DNA of 64,000 bases, from IMG/VR virus record IMGVR_UViG_3300028416_000004, positions 168,515 through 232,514 of that record; one strand, given 5' to 3'. A model generated the notes under the pieces. The model did no database searches. It saw only the letters and a list, made by a program, of their open reading frames with translations, and had not been told where the DNA came from. Position 1 is the stretch's first letter, and every line of letters starts with the position of its first letter. Both the position numbers and the translations under genes were made by a program. Below are positions 6,576-63,873 of the stretch, piece after piece.

Positions 6576-9539
6576 ATGGCAGATATTATAAAAAAAATAA
6601 AAACCAATAAAGATGTAAATGTAATAACTTACTTTACGACAGTTGATGCGAGTTCAAAAGAAATTTTTGAAAAACTCAAAAATATTTCCAGTTTACCAAC
6701 TATAAATAGACAACTTAGAATTTGGGATACTATACAACAACAAGGAAAAGAAGCTTATGCAATAAAAGGAGCAAATAATAAAGTTGTTGAATTGTTAGAA
6801 ATGGTAGATGGTTCTTATTGTAAAAGAATACCTTTAACTAATGAATTTAAATTTTTATCTGAAGATGAAGAAAAGAATGTAGTTAAAGGTAAAGTTTTTT
6901 ATGCAAAACAAGATTATGTAAGACCATTAAAGAATGAAACTGTTGAAGAATTTATAGAACAAGCAATAGCTTACTCTGGAAATTCAGCATATTCAAATGT
7001 TTTTAATACAATTCAAAAAAAAACAGATTACTATGCTGACATAACTTTAAAAAGGAGTATAGATACACTCGATACTTTAAATGTCAAAAATAATCTTTTA
7101 TCTGAAGTACCAACTCAAGAGTCAGACACTGGTGTTGTATGTGGAACTTTAGTAGCTAGACAAAAAGTTTTAGATGAAAATGGAGAAAGAGCTTTAATTC
7201 CTTTGGCAAATGTTCCAATAGTTATTTTTAATCCTTCAGAAGAATTTCCTACATATACTTCTCAGGATGAAAATGGCAATAGAATAACTTTGAATGTCAT
7301 ACAAAATTCAGAACCAGAAGATTATTCAGATTTAAACTCTTATGTTTTAGATGTAGGTGTAGATAAGGCAAGAGAAGCTTTAGGGAGTAATGATGTTGGA
7401 GAGGAGTTTGATGGATTGAAACCTTTGTTAAAATCTGTTGAAAGTTTAAATTTACCTGAACATTATAAATATTCAACTATTACAAATGAAAAAGGAGAAT
7501 TTGTAATTCATGATGTACCTACTGGAAATCAAGTTTTATTATTTGAAGTAGATTTATTAAAACAAGGGATGAATAAAAGTGAAGTCGCCTTAAATTTCTT
7601 CCCATACACTAATGAAGAATTACCTAACATAGATAATGTACCTCATTTTTATTATAGGCAAATTCCAATCTCTGTAGTTTCTTCTTGGGGCGAATTTCAA
7701 ACTGGATTTACTGAAGTGAATATAACTTCTAATTTAGATATGAGAAAATGGTCTACTTTTTATGTATCTCCCATTTCTGTTGAAGATAATAATTTAGAAG
7801 AACTTTTTGCTTTAGGTAATTTTAGTAGATTAAATATTTTAGCTAAAGATATGACTAAAGAAGGATATCCTTTAACTACAGAAATAGTAGAAGTGGATGA
7901 TATTTTTTCTAGAGTTGAAAATCAAAGATTAGAGTGGTTTAATGAAAATAAATTTACTAAGTCACAGATTAATTTTAGTAAAAATAATTTTCAAACTTTT
8001 AAACTACCTGCTAATCTTTATGACCCAAATGGAATATCATCTAAAGATGGTGGAAGAACTAAATTAAATTCTAAAAAAGGTGTTTGGTTATGTTCTTATC
8101 AAATGAAAATGTATTACGAAGGAAATCCAGATGTTTATCGAACAACTGGATTTTTAAGAGATAAATTAGAAGAAAATGCTGTTCATTCAAGTCATTTTGA
8201 TGCTAATAGAGGTGTAGACTCTAATCCTTCTTCTGCTACTGGCAACGGATACAATACTTCTATCAACACTTTTCCATATGAAAGAACTTGGACAATAAAT
8301 TACCCAGAACCTTATAAAATACCTTCACTACCTATAGAATATAATGAAAAAGACTTCAATAATCAAGTTGAGCCTAGATATTTAGATGGTGATTTAGCTG
8401 GGTTTTATTATGGTCAAGAAGAATCAACAGGGTATGGACTTATGACTCCCTTAGAAGGAGGTGATGCTATATATAATAAATTTTCACAGACGATTACTAA
8501 AAGTAGAATATATAAATATGAAACAGATGTTTCTTGGCATGAAGAATATTCAAATGGATTTAGAAAATCACAACACTCTAATCTTTTTCAAGGTAAACAT
8601 TTTACTGTAAAAAGTGGAGAAAAGTATCAAAGAATAGAATGTGGATTTGCTTATTGGTTAAAACCAGAAGGTTGGGGTAGAATTAATAATCAAGGTTGGG
8701 GTGATATTATGTTAAATTCAGATATTAATTCAAATTATTCATCTTCAGACAATAAACTTATACCTCAATCTTATATAGGTGCAAATTATAGACAGAGTGA
8801 AAATTTATTATTAAAAATGGATAGCTCAATTTCTCCTTCATGGTTAAGACAAGGTGCTATTGATTTTTATAGAATTGTAGATGATTCTCCTCAATTTTTA
8901 GAAGAAAAAATACCATCACCAATTAAAAAGTATGGCAAAGTTGTAATTGAAAATATCTACACCAATAGAGAAAAGGCTATCTCTAGGCTTGAATTACGAA
9001 TAAGTAATAAAAAAAACTATAGAATGAGAATTTCACAAAATTCTGTTATTGAAATAACAAATAATGGTGCCATAAAATCTGAAATAACAGTTAATGGTGA
9101 TAAGAGACAAGTTGAACCAAAAAAATCTATCTCTTTTAATGTTGCATCTTATACTGAAATTACATTTACTTCAAATTTAGATTATGATATTCAAAAAAAT
9201 TCTTATGATACTTGTAATTATACATTTAAGTTTAAAAATAGTGAAATTAAGAAAGTAGACACTATAATTTATGATTATTATAACTTTACCTTAACAGCTG
9301 GTGAACAAACTCAAATACCAACTAGATATTTAGTTACGACAGTATATAGTGCTGAAGGTAATGTAAAAATCAAGAAAAAAGGAGTTAAGAAGTGTAAAAA
9401 AACATTCAATCAAGCAGGCACATATCAGATTAATGGTTTGATTTTTGAAAAAACTAAATCTTCATCAGCATTAAGCTTCACTTCATCACGAGTAGGTCAT
9501 GATTGTGCTGATGGTGGTATTAAAATTTTGAGAGTTTAA
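6576..9539 (+). CDS. Large virion structural protein with prealbumin/carboxypeptidase-regulatory-like domain
   Basis: 987 aa; YSTITNEKGEFVIHDVPTGNQVLLFEVD beta-sandwich motif; lies in the structural operon. Confidence 0.55.
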   Translation: MADIIKKIKTNKDVNVITYFTTVDASSKEIFEKLKNISSLPTINRQLRIWDTIQQQGKEAYAIKGANNKVVELLEMVDGSYCKRIPLTNEFKFLSEDEEKNVVKGKVFYAKQDYVRPLKNETVEEFIEQAIAYSGNSAYSNVFNTIQKKTDYYADITLKRSIDTLDTLNVKNNLLSEVPTQESDTGVVCGTLVARQKVLDENGERALIPLANVPIVIFNPSEEFPTYTSQDENGNRITLNVIQNSEPEDYSDLNSYVLDVGVDKAREALGSNDVGEEFDGLKPLLKSVESLNLPEHYKYSTITNEKGEFVIHDVPTGNQVLLFEVDLLKQGMNKSEVALNFFPYTNEELPNIDNVPHFYYRQIPISVVSSWGEFQTGFTEVNITSNLDMRKWSTFYVSPISVEDNNLEELFALGNFSRLNILAKDMTKEGYPLTTEIVEVDDIFSRVENQRLEWFNENKFTKSQINFSKNNFQTFKLPANLYDPNGISSKDGGRTKLNSKKGVWLCSYQMKMYYEGNPDVYRTTGFLRDKLEENAVHSSHFDANRGVDSNPSSATGNGYNTSINTFPYERTWTINYPEPYKIPSLPIEYNEKDFNNQVEPRYLDGDLAGFYYGQEESTGYGLMTPLEGGDAIYNKFSQTITKSRIYKYETDVSWHEEYSNGFRKSQHSNLFQGKHFTVKSGEKYQRIECGFAYWLKPEGWGRINNQGWGDIMLNSDINSNYSSSDNKLIPQSYIGANYRQSENLLLKMDSSISPSWLRQGAIDFYRIVDDSPQFLEEKIPSPIKKYGKVVIENIYTNREKAISRLELRISNKKNYRMRISQNSVIEITNNGAIKSEITVNGDKRQVEPKKSISFNVASYTEITFTSNLDYDIQKNSYDTCNYTFKFKNSEIKKVDTIIYDYYNFTLTAGEQTQIPTRYLVTTVYSAEGNVKIKKKGVKKCKKTFNQAGTYQINGLIFEKTKSSSALSFTSSRVGHDCADGGIKILRV

Positions 9540-60622: not shown

Positions 60623-62521
60623 ATGACTTCAAATACAATTATTATTACAAAACTCAAAACAAATTATAAAATAGAATATAATTTTAGAAAAAATTTGAGT
60701 GACTTCATAAAAAGTTTTCCAGAAGACCAAAGGAAAATACAAGTAGAATATATACAAAATTCAGACGGTAGTACGTATGAAAATTGGTATAGAATAGTTT
60801 CTTCTGGATATATAGGTAAAGTTGTATCTTTTATAAAAGATAATGGTTTTCCATTTAAGTTTACTAATTTAACAAATGAAGAAGTTGAAGAATTAAGAAA
60901 AGAGTTTGAAAAGAGACAAGAATCTTTACTTAAAGCTTTATCTATGAAAACTGAAAATATAGATACTTCTCATATTGATTTTTCTTTTATGAATATAGAG
61001 CCATATGAATACCAAAAGAAAGCTGCTGTTTTTTTTGACACTTGTAATGGAAAAGCCTTACTTGGAGACCAACCAGGGGTAGGAAAAACTGCCTCTGCTA
61101 TGACTTACGCTGCTTGGAAAAAAAAGAAGACTCTAATAGTTTGTCCAGCAAACTTAAGACTTAATTGGAGGAGTGAAATACTTAAGTTTACTAAAGAGAA
61201 GGCGTTTGTTTATAAGTGGAAACCAACAAAAAAGTCAAAGAAAATAAATCACTCAAAAGATGAATCTATGTTCCACATAATAAGTTATAGTTCATTAGAC
61301 ACTTATATAACTATAGAGATGTCTCACAAATGTAAAAATGTATTTTGTGGCTGGAGTGAAAGAAATAGTAAAAAAAGATACAAAGATAAAGTTTGTCCAA
61401 GTTGTGGTGTTAGGAATATGGTAAATTCAAGAGCTACAAAAAATATATCCTTCACCCCAGACAAAGAAGGTCATCAATTGAATCCAAAAGATTATGAAAT
61501 ATTAATAATGGATGAAGCTCACTACATTAAAAACGACTCTGCAGATAGAACTAAATTAGCAAAGAAAACTTTAAAAGAAATACCTCAAAGATTATTATTG
61601 ACAGGCACAGCAATAAAAAGTAGACCATATGAATTTTATTCTTTGTTGAATTTTTTATATCCAGAAGAATGGAGTAATGCTCATTCATTTGGAATGAGGT
61701 ATTGTGCTGCAGAAAAGAATAATTTTGGATGGGATTATTCAGGTGCTTCTAATTTGGATGAATTATTTGAAAAGATTTCACCTTTCTTCTTGAGAAGATT
61801 AAAAAAAGATATATTAAAACATTTACCCCCAAAAACATATACAGTAATACCTATAGAGCTTAGTTCTTCTGAAATGTCTGAATATAACAAAATAAAAAAA
61901 GGAATTAAAGAAGAAATGAGTCAAGATGATAAAAATGCAGACAATAGAATGAATCACTTGACTAGGATTCAAAAGTTAAAAATGTTTACATCTGAAATAA
62001 AAATGAAAAAAGCTTTTGAGTTTATTCAAGATATCATAGATGGAGATGAAAAAGTTGTAGTATTTACTCAATATAAAAGTATTTCATATGAGGTAGTAAG
62101 CAAATTTGGAGACAAAGCAGTTGTTTTTAATGGAGATATAAATGCTAACAAAAAAGAAGAAGCAGTAGAAGCTTTTATGGATGATAAAAATATAAAGGTT
62201 TTTTCTGGTACAATTGGAGCGGCAGGTGTAGGAATAACTTTAACCTCTGCTAGTATTTCAATTTTTATAGACCAACCTTGGACTAGTGCTGATAGAGAAC
62301 AAGCAGAAGATAGAATACATAGAGCTTCTTCAAAAGCGGATAAAATACAAATAATTAGATTGGTCTGTCAAGATACTATAGATGAAGATATCGAAAAGTT
62401 GTTAAATCAAAAATCTTCAATTTTATCTAAAGTGTTAGATGGAAAAGAATTTGAGGAAACAGTAGAAGTTAAAGATGGTAGTATTTTTAATGATTTAGTA
62501 AGTTTGTTATATAATTCTTAA
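60623..62521 (+). CDS. SNF2/SWI2-family (SF2) helicase/annealing ATPase with Zn-finger insert
   Basis: LGDQPGVGKT, DEAH, LLTGT, LRRLKKDI, AAGVGITL and QAEDRIHR motifs; C.{4}C...C..C insert. Confidence 0.9.
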   Translation: MTSNTIIITKLKTNYKIEYNFRKNLSDFIKSFPEDQRKIQVEYIQNSDGSTYENWYRIVSSGYIGKVVSFIKDNGFPFKFTNLTNEEVEELRKEFEKRQESLLKALSMKTENIDTSHIDFSFMNIEPYEYQKKAAVFFDTCNGKALLGDQPGVGKTASAMTYAAWKKKKTLIVCPANLRLNWRSEILKFTKEKAFVYKWKPTKKSKKINHSKDESMFHIISYSSLDTYITIEMSHKCKNVFCGWSERNSKKRYKDKVCPSCGVRNMVNSRATKNISFTPDKEGHQLNPKDYEILIMDEAHYIKNDSADRTKLAKKTLKEIPQRLLLTGTAIKSRPYEFYSLLNFLYPEEWSNAHSFGMRYCAAEKNNFGWDYSGASNLDELFEKISPFFLRRLKKDILKHLPPKTYTVIPIELSSSEMSEYNKIKKGIKEEMSQDDKNADNRMNHLTRIQKLKMFTSEIKMKKAFEFIQDIIDGDEKVVVFTQYKSISYEVVSKFGDKAVVFNGDINANKKEEAVEAFMDDKNIKVFSGTIGAAGVGITLTSASISIFIDQPWTSADREQAEDRIHRASSKADKIQIIRLVCQDTIDEDIEKLLNQKSSILSKVLDGKEFEETVEVKDGSIFNDLVSLLYNS

Positions 62522-62550: not shown

Positions 62551-62581
62551 TTTGTTTTTTTGTAATGAACAATTAAATTTG
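62551..62581 (+). promoter_or_regulatory. Bacteroidota primary-sigma promoter driving the tRNA cluster
   Basis: TTTG (62551-54)-N19-TAAATTTG (62574-81), a full consensus match. Confidence 0.75.
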
Positions 62582-62627
62582 TCGTTATATAATAAAAAGC
62601 TCTTTGAAATAATGGAGATAATTAAAA

Positions 62628-62702
62628 GCTCCCATCGTCTATCGGTTAGGACATCAGGTTTTCATCCTGAAAAGCGGGGTTCGATTCCCCGTGGGAGTAC
62701 CA
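62628..62702 (+). tRNA. tRNA-Glu (TTC), CCA encoded
   Basis: Acceptor GCTCCCA/TGGGAGT; anticodon arm TCAGG-TTTTCAT-CCTGA; T-arm GCGGG-TTCGATT-CCCGT-like; ends ACCA. Confidence 0.92.
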
Positions 62703-62749
62703 CTTGTTTTTAATTTCATTATCACAAATAAGTGAAATATATAATATAT

Positions 62750-62821
62750 TGCGTGAAAGTGTAAAAGGTTGCATGGGACGCTCATAACATCTACGGGGTG
62801 GTTCGAATCCACAACACGCTA
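62750..62821 (+). tRNA. Degenerate tRNA with CAT anticodon (Met-like; possibly a pseudo-tRNA)
   Basis: Cloverleaf with CTCATAA loop and GGTTCGAATCC T-arm, but mismatches at 1:72, 7:66, 30:40 and 49:65, A at position 8, and no CCA. Confidence 0.55.
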
Positions 62822-62870
62822 CAAAGATTTAGAGTAATTAACTAAATCTTGTCTAGTTCGAAATAGACGA

Positions 62871-62944
62871 TTGAATATAGTGTAAGAGGCACGGAAAAAG
62901 GTAATACGGACTCAAGATTAAGGTTCGATTCATTATTATTCAAC
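62871..62944 (+). ncRNA. tRNA-like element lacking a foldable anticodon arm
   Basis: TTGAATA/TATTCAA acceptor-like stem, TA-GTGT..GCAC D-arm, GGTTCGATTC T-loop; the 25-nt middle has no stem. Confidence 0.45.
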
Positions 62945-63160
62945 TAGTGAGTAAGAGGTGCTCATAGAGTTTGTAGGTAACTCCACAACAAAACCTTCCC
63001 CCAAAGTCTCATGTAGGGTTATGAGTGAGGTATGTGGAATCAGGGCGGAAAGTCCTCCTACCCCCACATTAAGGACTGACGTTTTCAGTGGGTAAGACCA
63101 ACAGGTTTTAGAAAAAGGAAAAAACCGATATATCTAGCATATGTAATCTCAATATGTGAC
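62945..63160 (+). ncRNA. Unassigned structured RNA candidate A
   Basis: GC-richer intergenic stretch with several stems and a loop-bulge pairing GTAGG/CCTAC (see findings). Confidence 0.5.
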
Positions 63161-63164
63161 ATTT

Positions 63165-63238
63165 GCACCCATAGCTCAGCTGAATAGAGCAATTCACTTC
63201 TAATGAATAGGTCCCAGGTTTGAATCCTGGTGGGTGTA
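63165..63238 (+). tRNA. tRNA-Arg (TCT)
   Basis: GCACCCA/TGGGTGT acceptor; ATTCA-CTTCTAA-TGAAT anticodon arm; CCAGG-TTTGAAT-CCTGG T-arm. Confidence 0.9.
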
Positions 63239-63424
63239 CTAAAAAAAGTGATAAGTTCCAAACAAATAATTAGCTCTACCAGGGCACAAATCCGTGTGAG
63301 GTTATCTAATGTGAGGAATTTCTTTTAATATCACACCTATACATAGGTCGAAAAGATATATAAAAAATGGATTTATTTAATACTAGTCAAAATAAATTGT
63401 TTATATTAAAAGATAGCTTTTTAA

Positions 63425-63498
63425 GGTCCTTTAACTCAGTTGGTTAGAGTAACTGACTCATAATCAGTAGGTCGATGGTTCGAGTCCATCAAGGACCA
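63425..63498 (+). tRNA. tRNA with CAT anticodon, most likely Ile2 (lysidine-modified)
   Basis: GGTCCTT/AAGGACC acceptor with C4-G69 and C5-G68 (TilS determinants in E. coli); ACTGA-CTCATAA-TCAGT arm. Confidence 0.85.
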
Positions 63499-63512
63499 CA
63501 TATTAAACTAGT

Positions 63513-63785
63513 CTCCAGAAACTTCTTTTATGTAAAGCCTAAGTTGCTAAGGTAAGAATGATAGCAGTTTCTCACAATCGATTAAGCACTACATGACAAT
63601 TGTGAGGATGTAGTAATAAACTTGCATAATAAGAAGTTTCAAATGGAGTATTTCACATTGTCGGTTTGGTGGATGTGATACACGACCCTTAGACGTAAGG
63701 GCTACTCTTAATAATAAGTTGTAATCGCCCAGGGTAACGGGGACAACCAATATAGAGAAAAGCAGTTAAAATCTGTAGGCCGACA
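63513..63785 (+). ncRNA. Unassigned structured RNA candidate B (pseudoknotted domain plus multibranch domain)
   Basis: Long-range stems 63513-35/63622-48 and 63659-68/63776-85; H-type pseudoknot at 63571-63614. Confidence 0.65.
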
Positions 63786-63799
63786 CATTATTTATAAAC

Positions 63800-63873
63800 T
63801 CCTCCTTAGTTCAGTTGGTTAGAACATTTGACTGTTAATCAAAGGGTCCTTGGTTCGAGTCCAAGAGGGGGAG
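63800..63873 (+). tRNA. tRNA-Asn (GTT)
   Basis: TCCTCCT/AGGGGGA acceptor with G73; TTTGA-CTGTTAA-TCAAA arm; CTTGG-TTCGAGT-CCAAG T-arm. Confidence 0.92.

What the first reader, a model, noticed from the sequence alone, without database searches (positions are those of the whole stretch)
62945..63160. Structured RNA candidate A with a loop-to-bulge pseudoknot, between tRNA genes
Seen, by manual pairing: CCTT 62994-97 / AAGG 63071-74 encloses hairpin CTCAT 63008-12 / ATGAG 63021-25 and stem ATGTGG 63032-37 / CCACAT 63064-69, capped by AGGGC-GGAAA-GTCCT. The first hairpin's loop GTAGG (63013-17) is exactly complementary to the bulged CCTAC (63057-61). Further hairpins: TGAG/CTCA, GAGTT/AACTC, ACTGA/TCAGT and GGTTTT/AAAACC. 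It is far more GC-rich than other intergenic DNA and has no ORF. Known: phage tRNA arrays host ncRNAs such as GOLLD and theta ribozymes; this one matches neither pattern by eye.
Basis: partly seen in the sequence, partly recalled or inferred. Interest (0 to 1): 0.68.

Follow-up and report, generated by a model that had tools for sequence, protein, structure and literature searches.

The report
New structured RNA in phage tRNA arrays
The GC-rich spacer is a real gene for a roughly 220-base, heavily knotted RNA that sits between tRNA genes in more than a hundred giant phages from water samples, belongs to no catalogued RNA family, and has no known job yet.

Summary
Candidate A (window 62945-63164, + strand) is real. 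It is a diverged but intact member of a conserved family of structured RNAs about 220 nt long. I found full-length members in at least 116 IMG/VR viral contigs, always inside tRNA arrays and on the tRNA strand, usually 1-3 nt from a tRNA on each side. There is one copy per genome in jumbo and huge phages of 175-465 kb. A covariance model built from 12 homologues, without the window, hits the window full length at 61.7 bits (E about 2e-16). On 80 members, 95.7% of cells in 55 proposed pairs are standard pairs and 47 pairs show compensatory change. The window copy keeps 52 of 55 pairs, 22 of them changed on both sides. The fold has eight helices, two covariation-supported pseudoknots, a loop-loop contact joining the 5' and 3' hairpins, and a tertiary pair. 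No Rfam 15 family, GenBank phage or paper I could search matches it. The most likely reading is a stable trans-acting RNA cut out of the array transcript by tRNA-processing enzymes. Its function is unknown.

The parts
62945..63164 (+). Whole RNA gene, about 220 nt, from just after the upstream tRNA-like element to the base before tRNA-Arg
   Evidence: Model R1, built without the window, matches 62940-63165 full length at 61.7 bits, E about 2e-16. The boundaries follow the family rule that a tRNA abuts each side.
62948..62964 (+). H1: 5' hairpin, 62948-52 paired with 62960-64, loop AAGAGGT
   Evidence: 5 of 5 pairs are standard in the window. 4 of 5 pairs have compensatory changes in the family and 99.3% of cells are paired.
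62967..62983 (+). H2: hairpin GAGTT 62967-71 / AACTC 62979-83, loop 62972-78
   Evidence: 98.3% of cells are paired in the family. Four window pairs are changed on both sides relative to the consensus.
62975..62996 (+). PK1: the H2 loop AGGT 62975-78 pairs with ACCT 62993-96
   Evidence: Found by mutual information; it was not part of the model's structure. 99.3% of cells are paired and all 4 pairs are compensatory in the family. In the window 3 of 4 pairs are changed on both sides.
62998..63018 (+). PK2: CCC 62998-63000 pairs with GGG 63016-18 in the H3 loop
   Evidence: It was not part of the model's structure. 91.9% of cells are paired and all 3 pairs are compensatory in the family. All 3 window pairs are standard and changed on both sides.
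63006..63031 (+). H3: variable hairpin.
   Evidence: All 7 pairs are compensatory in the family, with up to 5-6 pair types each. The window register is ambiguous. Strain variant 63028 A>T would break one pair of the model's register.
63034..63067 (+). H4: closing stem GTGG 63034-37 / CCAC 63064-67, extendable in the window to 63032-37/63064-69. It encloses H5
   Evidence: The second H4 pair (A4 alignment columns 161/227 = window 63035/63066) shows GC 31, UA 28, AU 13 and CG 7 in the family, and 95.3% of cells are paired.
63042..63063 (+). H5: nested hairpin. It contains the segment CCTACCC 63057-63, which has no counterpart in the homologues
   Evidence: All 4 pairs are compensatory in the family. 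At least three alternative registers exist in the window.
63089..63100 (+). H6: short stem 63089-91/63098-100 capped by the near-invariant loop GTAAGA 63092-97, with T63093-A63097 paired
   Evidence: The stem covaries. The loop pair is UA in 42 members and GC in 35, with no exception. The linked strain changes 63089 T>C and 63101 A>G in run X12 are compatible with a compensatory change in an extended stem (my inference).
63102..63127 (+). H7: C63102-G63127 plus GGTTT 63104-08 / AAACC 63122-26, with an A-rich loop
   Evidence: 95.8% of cells are paired and 4 pairs are compensatory.
63095..63133 (+). Tertiary pair A63095 (H6 loop) with T63133 (strand joining H7 and H8)
   Evidence: AU in 38 members, UA in 33 and other in 9 across the family. 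A single pair that switches together with a subfamily is the weakest of the contacts.
63138..63158 (+). H8: 3' hairpin, CATAT 63138-42 with 63152-56 (all Watson-Crick) or 63154-58 (model register). The loop carries the conserved AATCTC
   Evidence: 98.5% of cells are paired and all 6 pairs are compensatory in the family. Four window pairs are changed on both sides.
62955..63150 (+). Loop-loop contact: H1 loop GAGGT 62955-59 with H8 loop ATCTC 63146-50
   Evidence: 99.7% of cells are paired over 80 members and it was not in the model's structure. It is mostly invariant, with G-U one-sided changes and one compensatory case. Whether the contact is within one molecule or between molecules is unknown.
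62872..62944 (+). Upstream tRNA-like element that sets the 5' boundary
   Evidence: ARAGORN calls it only at a lowered threshold. It has homologues in other arrays that carry the family.
63165..63239 (+). tRNA-Arg (TCT) that sets the 3' boundary
   Evidence: ARAGORN, and Rfam tRNA at 65.9 bits.

Best explanation
Candidate A is an intact gene for a structured non-coding RNA of about 220 nt. It belongs to a conserved RNA family that is not in Rfam 15. Jumbo and huge tailed phages of aquatic habitats carry the family as a single copy inside their tRNA arrays.

Shown:
- family membership
- the fold: eight helices, two internal pseudoknots, and a contact between the loops of the first and last hairpins
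- the position between tRNAs on the tRNA strand
- presence of the array in RNA libraries.

Inferred:
- The RNA is transcribed with the tRNAs from the promoter-like block at 62566-62593.
- It is released with defined ends by the enzymes that mature the flanking tRNAs: RNase P at the 5' end of tRNA-Arg, and a 3'-processing nuclease such as RNase Z at the upstream tRNA-like element.
- It then acts in trans as a compact, closed, pseudoknotted particle that binds a partner or assembles with itself. It does not act as a cis regulator.

My sub-confidences are about 0.95 for family membership and real structure, about 0.7 for biogenesis through tRNA processing, and about 0.5 for a trans-acting binding or assembly role.
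For: **Membership**
- R1, built from 12 homologues without the window, hits 62940-63165 full length at 61.7 bits.
- The window keeps 52 of 55 family pairs, 22 of them changed on both sides.

**Structure**
- 95.7% of cells are paired, against 79.9% in shuffles and 33-50% when partners are slid.
- 47 of 55 pairs are compensatory.
- The covariation score is 0.402, against 0.130 in shuffles.
- The pseudoknots and the loop contacts were not in the model, so the alignment is not fitted to them.

**Family size**
- Full-length members occur in at least 116 loci.

**Context**
- A same-strand tRNA starts 1-3 nt after the RNA in about 50 of 80 loci.
- A tRNA ends about 3 nt before H1 in about 40 of 80 loci.
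- The flanking tRNAs differ from locus to locus.
- There is one copy per genome in 6 records of 175-465 kb.
- No protein gene is a conserved neighbour.

**Expression**
- In RNA library X6 one contig at depth 46 spans 62630-63865, that is tRNA-Glu to tRNA-Asn, with depth 0 on both flanks.

**Precedent**
- The T4 rnaC and rnaD genes lie next to tRNA-Arg.
- GOLLD and ROOL lie near phage tRNA islands (PMC12286853).
Against: - There are no raw reads, so no RNA ends, no strand information and no discrete species have been shown.
- The ends of the X6 contig coincide with homopolymer runs that also break assemblies.
- The window copy scores lowest of all full-length members but one, and H3 and H5 have ambiguous registers.
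- The closest relatives of this phage lack the RNA. One strain has 62701-63164 deleted. So the RNA is dispensable.
- Nothing found here points to a partner or an activity.
Confidence: 0.6

Rival explanations
1. It is a ribozyme that acts on tRNA precursors. It would either cleave itself at a junction with a neighbouring tRNA, as a functional analogue of theta/HDV-like ribozymes, or act in trans on tRNAs like a small RNase P.
For: - Its complexity is at ribozyme level: 8 helices, 2-3 pseudoknots and many invariant unpaired bases.
- It abuts tRNAs strictly on both sides.
- The terminal loop contact would bring the two flanking tRNA ends together (inference).
Against: - There is one copy in arrays of up to 26 tRNAs, and the neighbouring tRNAs differ from locus to locus, so it cannot serve each tRNA in cis.
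- The 3' tail before the tRNA varies in length and sequence.
- No HDV-like, RNase P or other ribozyme model matches at E <= 10.
Confidence: 0.15
2. It forms an RNA-only multimer, as ROOL and GOLLD do. The complementary loops of H1 (GAGAT) and H8 (ATCTC) would pair between molecules to build rings or cages.
For: - The two loops are complementary in 99.7% of cells.
- ROOL and GOLLD share the tRNA-island context and assemble through kissing loops (PMC12286853).
Against: - Covariation cannot tell pairing within one molecule from pairing between molecules.
- At 220 nt it is far smaller than ROOL or GOLLD.
- There is no experimental datum.
Confidence: 0.15
3. The reader's fold is the working structure in this phage: the H3 loop GTAGG 63013-17 pairs with CCTAC 63057-61, and CCTT/AAGG encloses the domain.
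For: - The complement is exact.
- CCTAC lies in a segment found only in this lineage, so a lineage-specific contact cannot be excluded.
Against: - Such a complement arises in 34% of shuffles.
- It competes for G63016-17 with PK2, which covaries across the family and is intact in the window.
- CCTT overlaps PK1.
- The model can place CCTAC inside the H5 loop.
Confidence: 0.08
4. It is inert debris: decayed tRNA genes, an intron remnant or imported GC-rich DNA.
For: - tRNA-like remnants lie just upstream.
- Relatives carry group I introns in tRNA genes.
- Folding energy is ordinary.
Against: - It is a full-length match to a conserved family, with 22 compensatory pairs.
- There is no tRNA or group I signal at E <= 10, although the same search finds both in relatives.
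Confidence: 0.02

Closest known systems
GOLLD and ROOL RNAs (Rfam; PMC12286853)
   Same: Both are orphan, highly pseudoknotted RNAs of phages and prophages, often beside tRNA islands. They have no partner protein gene, and loop-loop contacts are conserved.
   Different: - There is no model match at E <= 10.
- This RNA is about 220 nt, against about 500-800 nt or more.
- The helices and conserved motifs are unrelated.
- Multimer formation has not been tested here.
Phage T4 species 1 and 2 RNAs (rnaC, rnaD)
   Same: They are small stable RNAs of unknown function encoded directly next to tRNA-Arg in a phage tRNA cluster. From my own knowledge, they are matured together with the tRNAs.
   Different: - They are 139 and 119 nt long.
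- R1 with filters off finds nothing above 3.1 bits in the T4 cluster.
Theta (minimal HDV-like) ribozymes of gut phages
   Same: They are small structured RNAs placed right next to phage tRNA genes (from my own knowledge of the 2024 description; not re-read here).
   Different: - The covariation-supported fold is not the nested double pseudoknot of HDV-like ribozymes.
- It is four times longer.
- It occurs once per array.
- No HDV-family model matches.
Group I introns in phage tRNA genes
   Same: They are structured RNAs of similar size in the same arrays of related phages (L009 80.8 bits, L007 60.9 bits).
   Different: - This RNA lies between genes, not inside a tRNA.
- There is no RF00028 match at E <= 10.

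Membership tests
   61.7 bits, E about 2e-16, model positions 1-223.
   39 of the 42 helix pairs are standard in the window. The 3 failures are one each in H2, H5 and H8.
   4 of 4, 3 of 3 and 5 of 5 pairs are standard in the window, and 6 of them are changed on both sides.
   Present at 63090-99, 63102-29 and 63145-50.
   tRNA-Arg starts at 63165. A tRNA-like element ends at 62944.
GOLLD / ROOL | Match to the Rfam covariance model | tested here: not met
   No match at the gathering score or at E <= 10, either for the window or for the strong member L090.
Theta / HDV-like ribozyme | Nested double-pseudoknot topology with P1 starting at the cleavage site next to the tRNA | tested here: not met
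   The family fold has a different topology, and no HDV-family match appears at E <= 10. There is no theta-specific model in my tools.
Theta / HDV-like ribozyme | Self-scission | not testable with these tools
   This needs an in vitro cleavage assay.
Group I intron | Match to RF00028 and insertion within a host gene | tested here: not met
   No match at E <= 10. The same model finds introns in L009 and L007. ARAGORN with intron search finds no split tRNA.
tRNA / tRNA pseudogene | Cloverleaf detected by the Rfam tRNA model or by ARAGORN | tested here: not met
   Nothing is found within 62945-63164, even at E <= 10 or at the lowered ARAGORN threshold.
T4 rnaC / rnaD | Sequence and structure homology | tested here: not met
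   R1 with filters off scores at most 3.1 bits on the T4 cluster.

The most novel reading that the evidence does not exclude
The family is a new functional class of catalytic or self-assembling RNA that giant phages deploy alongside their tRNA sets. One possibility is a ribozyme or tRNA-binding RNA that acts on tRNAs, for example in the contest with host nucleases that target tRNAs. Another is a small RNA-only ring or cage built through the H1-H8 loop contact.
Probability: 0.2. Interest if true: 0.9.

Novelty: new variant of a known kind. Interest (0 to 1): 0.75.

Why it matters
Large structured RNAs with several pseudoknots are rare. Most classes whose function is known are ribozymes, riboswitches or cores of RNA-protein machines.

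This class has more than a hundred members and a fold already well defined by covariation. It has a clear genomic rule: one copy, between tRNAs, in jumbo and huge phages. It is absent from Rfam 15, from GenBank phages and from the papers I could search.

It adds a compact third example to the unexplained link between phage tRNA islands and ornate RNAs such as GOLLD and ROOL. At about 220 nt it is small enough for quick biochemical and structural work. If it acts on tRNAs or assembles on its own, it would bear on what phage tRNA arrays are for.

Tried and rejected
**Searches that found nothing**
- Rfam at the gathering score and at E <= 10 on the window and on a strong member: nothing.
- blastn against GenBank phages with the window, L077 and L090 members: nothing beyond short chance hits.
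- blastn and nhmmer against 21 viral and 31 metagenome loci found through the neighbouring SNF2 helicase: only identical copies. R1 on five whole records of the nearest relatives: none.
- The 16-mer GGGCGGAAAGTCCTCC: only the same phage plus chance hits.
- A genome contigs pattern scan: two short MAG contigs that are family members and two chance hits. No host can be inferred from this.
- Four literature searches and three papers read: no description found. The supplements of PMC10690425 are not held, so overlap with its 8,495 unnamed candidates cannot be excluded.

**Ideas tested and dropped**
- An RNase P-like reading of GGAAAGTCC: the motif is absent from the homologues and there is no RNase P match.
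- A split or intron-bearing tRNA: ARAGORN with introns gives only spurious antisense calls.
- Local similarity to the relatives' introns, or to the other spacers of the window: z <= 1.7.
- A remnant of a coding gene: the six-frame translation shows nothing.
- A partner protein nearby: the best cluster occurs in 15 of 81 loci.

**What led to the family**
The lead came from read laying. An RNA-library contig matched only 63050-63123 in a foreign context, and this suggested the pattern that found the family.

Full report
**Setting**

The window is the last 64 kb of a 232.5-kb IMG/VR virus record, 88% complete. The same phage appears as a 240.9-kb metagenome contig. Runs from 18 studies hold the stretch or part of it, sea water in most of the listed runs and marine sediment in some. 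The phage has a baseplate wedge protein and an SbcC-like nuclease and about 27% GC.

Candidate A lies downstream of an SNF2 helicase gene, 60623-62521, in a + strand array. The order of the array is:
- a promoter-like site at 62566-93, inside a block conserved in relatives
- tRNA-Glu 62628-62702
- two tRNA-like elements, 62750-62821 and 62872-62944
- candidate A
- tRNA-Arg 63165-63239
- a 185-nt spacer
- tRNA-Met
- a 300-nt spacer
- tRNA-Asn.

**Checking the observation**

GC reaches 46-50%, against 11-26% in other intergenic DNA. There is no + strand ORF.

The single sequence gives no statistical support for the drawn fold. RNAfold z-scores are -0.55 on the + strand and -1.23 on the - strand, and no sub-piece is exceptional. 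A perfect 5-nt complement to the GTAGGGTT loop appears in 34% of shuffles.

**Known families**

Rfam 15 reports only the four tRNAs at the gathering score. At E <= 10 it reports nothing meaningful inside 62945-63164. The same library finds group I introns in tRNA genes of related phages: L009 at 80.8 bits and L007 at 60.9 bits. So a group I intron here would have been seen. ARAGORN with intron search finds no split tRNA.

**Nearest relatives lack it**

Fifty-two loci were fetched through the helicase. Only copies identical over the candidate contain it. In phages whose helicase is 76-90% identical, the conserved promoter block runs straight into tRNA-Arg, or follows a tRNA-Ile. R1 finds nothing in five of their records.

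Logan contigs laid on the array showed three things:
- In RNA library X6, one contig at depth 46 covers 62630-63865 exactly, with zero depth on either flank. The contig ends also coincide with homopolymer runs, and contigs cannot show RNA ends.
- There are strain variants, and there is a form in run X18 in which 62701-63164 is replaced by 14 nt.
- A 697-nt RNA-library contig matches only 63050-63123 and is otherwise unlike the window.

**Finding the family**

That last contig suggested a conserved module. The pattern GGGTAAGACCARCAGGTT found homologues in unrelated viral contigs.

Model R1 was built from 12 homologues with a hand-derived nested structure and without the window. It finds a full-length member of about 215-240 nt in at least 116 loci, one of them carrying an insertion (274 nt). 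It hits the window at 62940-63165 with 61.7 bits, E about 2e-16, over model positions 1-223.

**Structure**

These counts are on 80 distinct members (alignment A4).

| Measure | Nested model, 37 pairs | With added contacts, 55 pairs |
|---|---|---|
| Cells forming standard pairs | 96.3% | 95.7% |
| Pairs with compensatory change | 33 | 47 |
| Covariation score | 0.384 | 0.402 |
| Score in shuffles | 0.107 | 0.130 |
| Score with slid partners | about 0.05 | about 0.045-0.07 |

Mutual information then revealed contacts that were not in the model, so the alignment is not fitted to them:
- **PK1:** the H2 loop pairs with the strand after H2. 99.3% of cells are paired and all four pairs are compensatory.
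- **PK2:** the strand before H3 pairs with the H3 loop. 91.9% of cells are paired and all three pairs are compensatory.
- **H6 hairpin:** a short covarying stem under the near-invariant GTAAGA loop, including a loop pair that is UA in 42 members and GC in 35.
- **H7 extension:** an extra C-G pair.
- **Tertiary pair:** a single pair between the H6 loop and the strand before H8, AU in 38 members and UA in 33.
- **Terminal loop contact:** the loops of H1 (GAGAT) and H8 (ATCTC) are complementary in 99.7% of cells. They are mostly invariant, with G-U changes and one compensatory case.

The loop pair plus a distant pair from the third loop base resembles a T-loop. That is a resemblance from memory, not a test.

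**The window copy**

The window keeps 52 of the 55 pairs, and 22 of them differ on both sides from the family's commonest pair. These include four in H2, three in PK1, three in PK2 and four in H8. That pattern fits a long-diverged copy under selection for structure, not a decaying one. Coordinates are in the parts list.

- H1, H2, H4 and H7 are right.
- H5 is right in kind, but its register is ambiguous in the window.
- H3 corresponds to CTCAT/ATGAG or to a shifted 7-pair version.
- The enclosing CCTT/AAGG helix overlaps PK1 and has no family counterpart.
- ACTGA/TCAGT has no family counterpart, and strain variant 63088 G>A with 63089 T>C breaks it.
- The pseudoknot partner CCTAC lies in a segment present only in this lineage. 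The family partner of that loop is upstream, and in the window it is intact: CCC 62998-63000 with GGG 63016-18.
- A lineage-specific H3-H5 contact cannot be excluded, but nothing supports it.

**Context**

- Members sit on the tRNA strand.
- A tRNA begins 1-3 nt after the RNA in about 50 of 80 loci.
- A tRNA ends about 3 nt before H1 in about 40 of 80 loci.
- In other loci a tRNA-like element that ARAGORN misses abuts the RNA.
- The neighbouring tRNAs vary: Asp, Ser, Pro, Gly, Met, Arg, Leu, Ile and others. Arrays reach 26 tRNAs.
- Six phage records of 175-465 kb, one complete and one 98% complete, hold exactly one copy each.
- No protein family is a regular neighbour. The best is an RNase H-like PF04308 protein in 15 of 81 loci, and a cyclic-phosphate-processing receiver domain occurs in 7.

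**How it most likely works**

Shown: a conserved, single-copy, complex fold, placed between tRNAs, and present in RNA libraries.

Inferred: it is co-transcribed with the array. RNase P cutting at the downstream tRNA, together with 3' processing of the upstream tRNA or tRNA-like element, gives it defined ends. The H1-H8 contact closes the molecule.

- A free-standing RNA with no downstream ORF is not a riboswitch.
- One copy among many varied tRNAs argues against a cis-processing role.
- That leaves a trans-acting particle: a binder or decoy, a self-assembling RNA, or a trans ribozyme.
- I favour the non-catalytic options, but only moderately.
- Its absence from close relatives and the deletion strain mark it as an accessory gene that moves with modules of the tRNA array. 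The tRNA-like elements upstream of it have homologues in other arrays that carry the family.

**Novelty**

- No Rfam match, even for a strong member.
- No GenBank phage match.
- Only two short MAG contigs among 185,579 species genomes.
- No homology to T4 rnaC or rnaD, which share the context.
- No description in the literature I could search.
- By context it is the same kind of thing as GOLLD, ROOL and the T4 species RNAs. By sequence and fold it is a new class.

**Limits**

- The alignment was made by the model whose nested helices it then supports.
- Members are related, so the shuffle controls overstate significance.
- The pattern scans were capped and biased towards conserved motifs.
- No raw reads were available.

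Noticed in passing
window 62750-62821 and 62872-62944: Two non-canonical tRNA-like elements lie here. The first has a CAT anticodon-like loop and scores 20 bits on the Rfam tRNA model. The second is called by ARAGORN only at a lowered threshold, as 'Val-TAC'. They are not simple debris: homologues lie in other arrays that carry the RNA family (L072 5180-5252 at 81%, L206 4637-4779 at 74%).
   Followed up: partly
window 63240-63424: The spacer between tRNA-Arg and tRNA-Met is about 80% identical to the stretch just upstream of tRNA-Met in related phages (L012 8942-9127, L048 6942-7127). This may be a second conserved non-coding element.
   Followed up: partly
window 63500-63799: A 300-nt spacer with 33-45% GC lies between tRNA-Met and tRNA-Asn. 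It has no Rfam match and no homologue among the loci fetched.
   Followed up: partly
L009 10108-10344; L007 8298-8493: Related phages carry group I introns inside tRNA genes. L009 has one in tRNA-Met at 80.8 bits. L007 has one in the anticodon loop of tRNA-Arg at 60.9 bits, and its exons match the intact gene of L005.
   Followed up: yes
window 62701-63164: There is a presence/absence polymorphism. A contig in marine-sediment run X18 joins tRNA-Glu to tRNA-Arg through 14 other bases and so lacks the tRNA-like elements and candidate A. Another X12 contig joins a tRNA-Glu-like sequence to 63120 onwards.
   Followed up: partly
L077 about 7400-7528, L073, L078, L080, L084 (just upstream of the RNA): A tRNA-like gene of about 110-190 nt has a perfect acceptor stem and T arm (…CAGGTTCGAATCCTGTCCTGACTACA) and a large insert. 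ARAGORN does not call it. It directly precedes the RNA in many loci.
   Followed up: no
L089 3320-3593 (also L092, L100): One family member is 274 nt long and carries an insertion of about 50 nt near its 5' end.
   Followed up: no
L082 209-365 (-): A permuted tmRNA gene (Rfam RF04321, 76 bits) lies on a viral contig that also carries the RNA family.
   Followed up: no
L136 5630-6079; L091 1767-2294: Genes linked to RNA repair recur near these tRNA arrays. A cyclic-phosphate-processing receiver domain (PF20274) occurs in 7 loci and an RNase H-like PF04308 protein in 15 loci.
   Followed up: partly
window 63088, 63089, 63101: In run X12 the only allele seen has G>A, T>C and A>G at these three sites. 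The changes at 63089 and 63101 would turn a U-A pair into C-G in an extended H6 stem, if A63100 is bulged out (my inference).
   Followed up: partly
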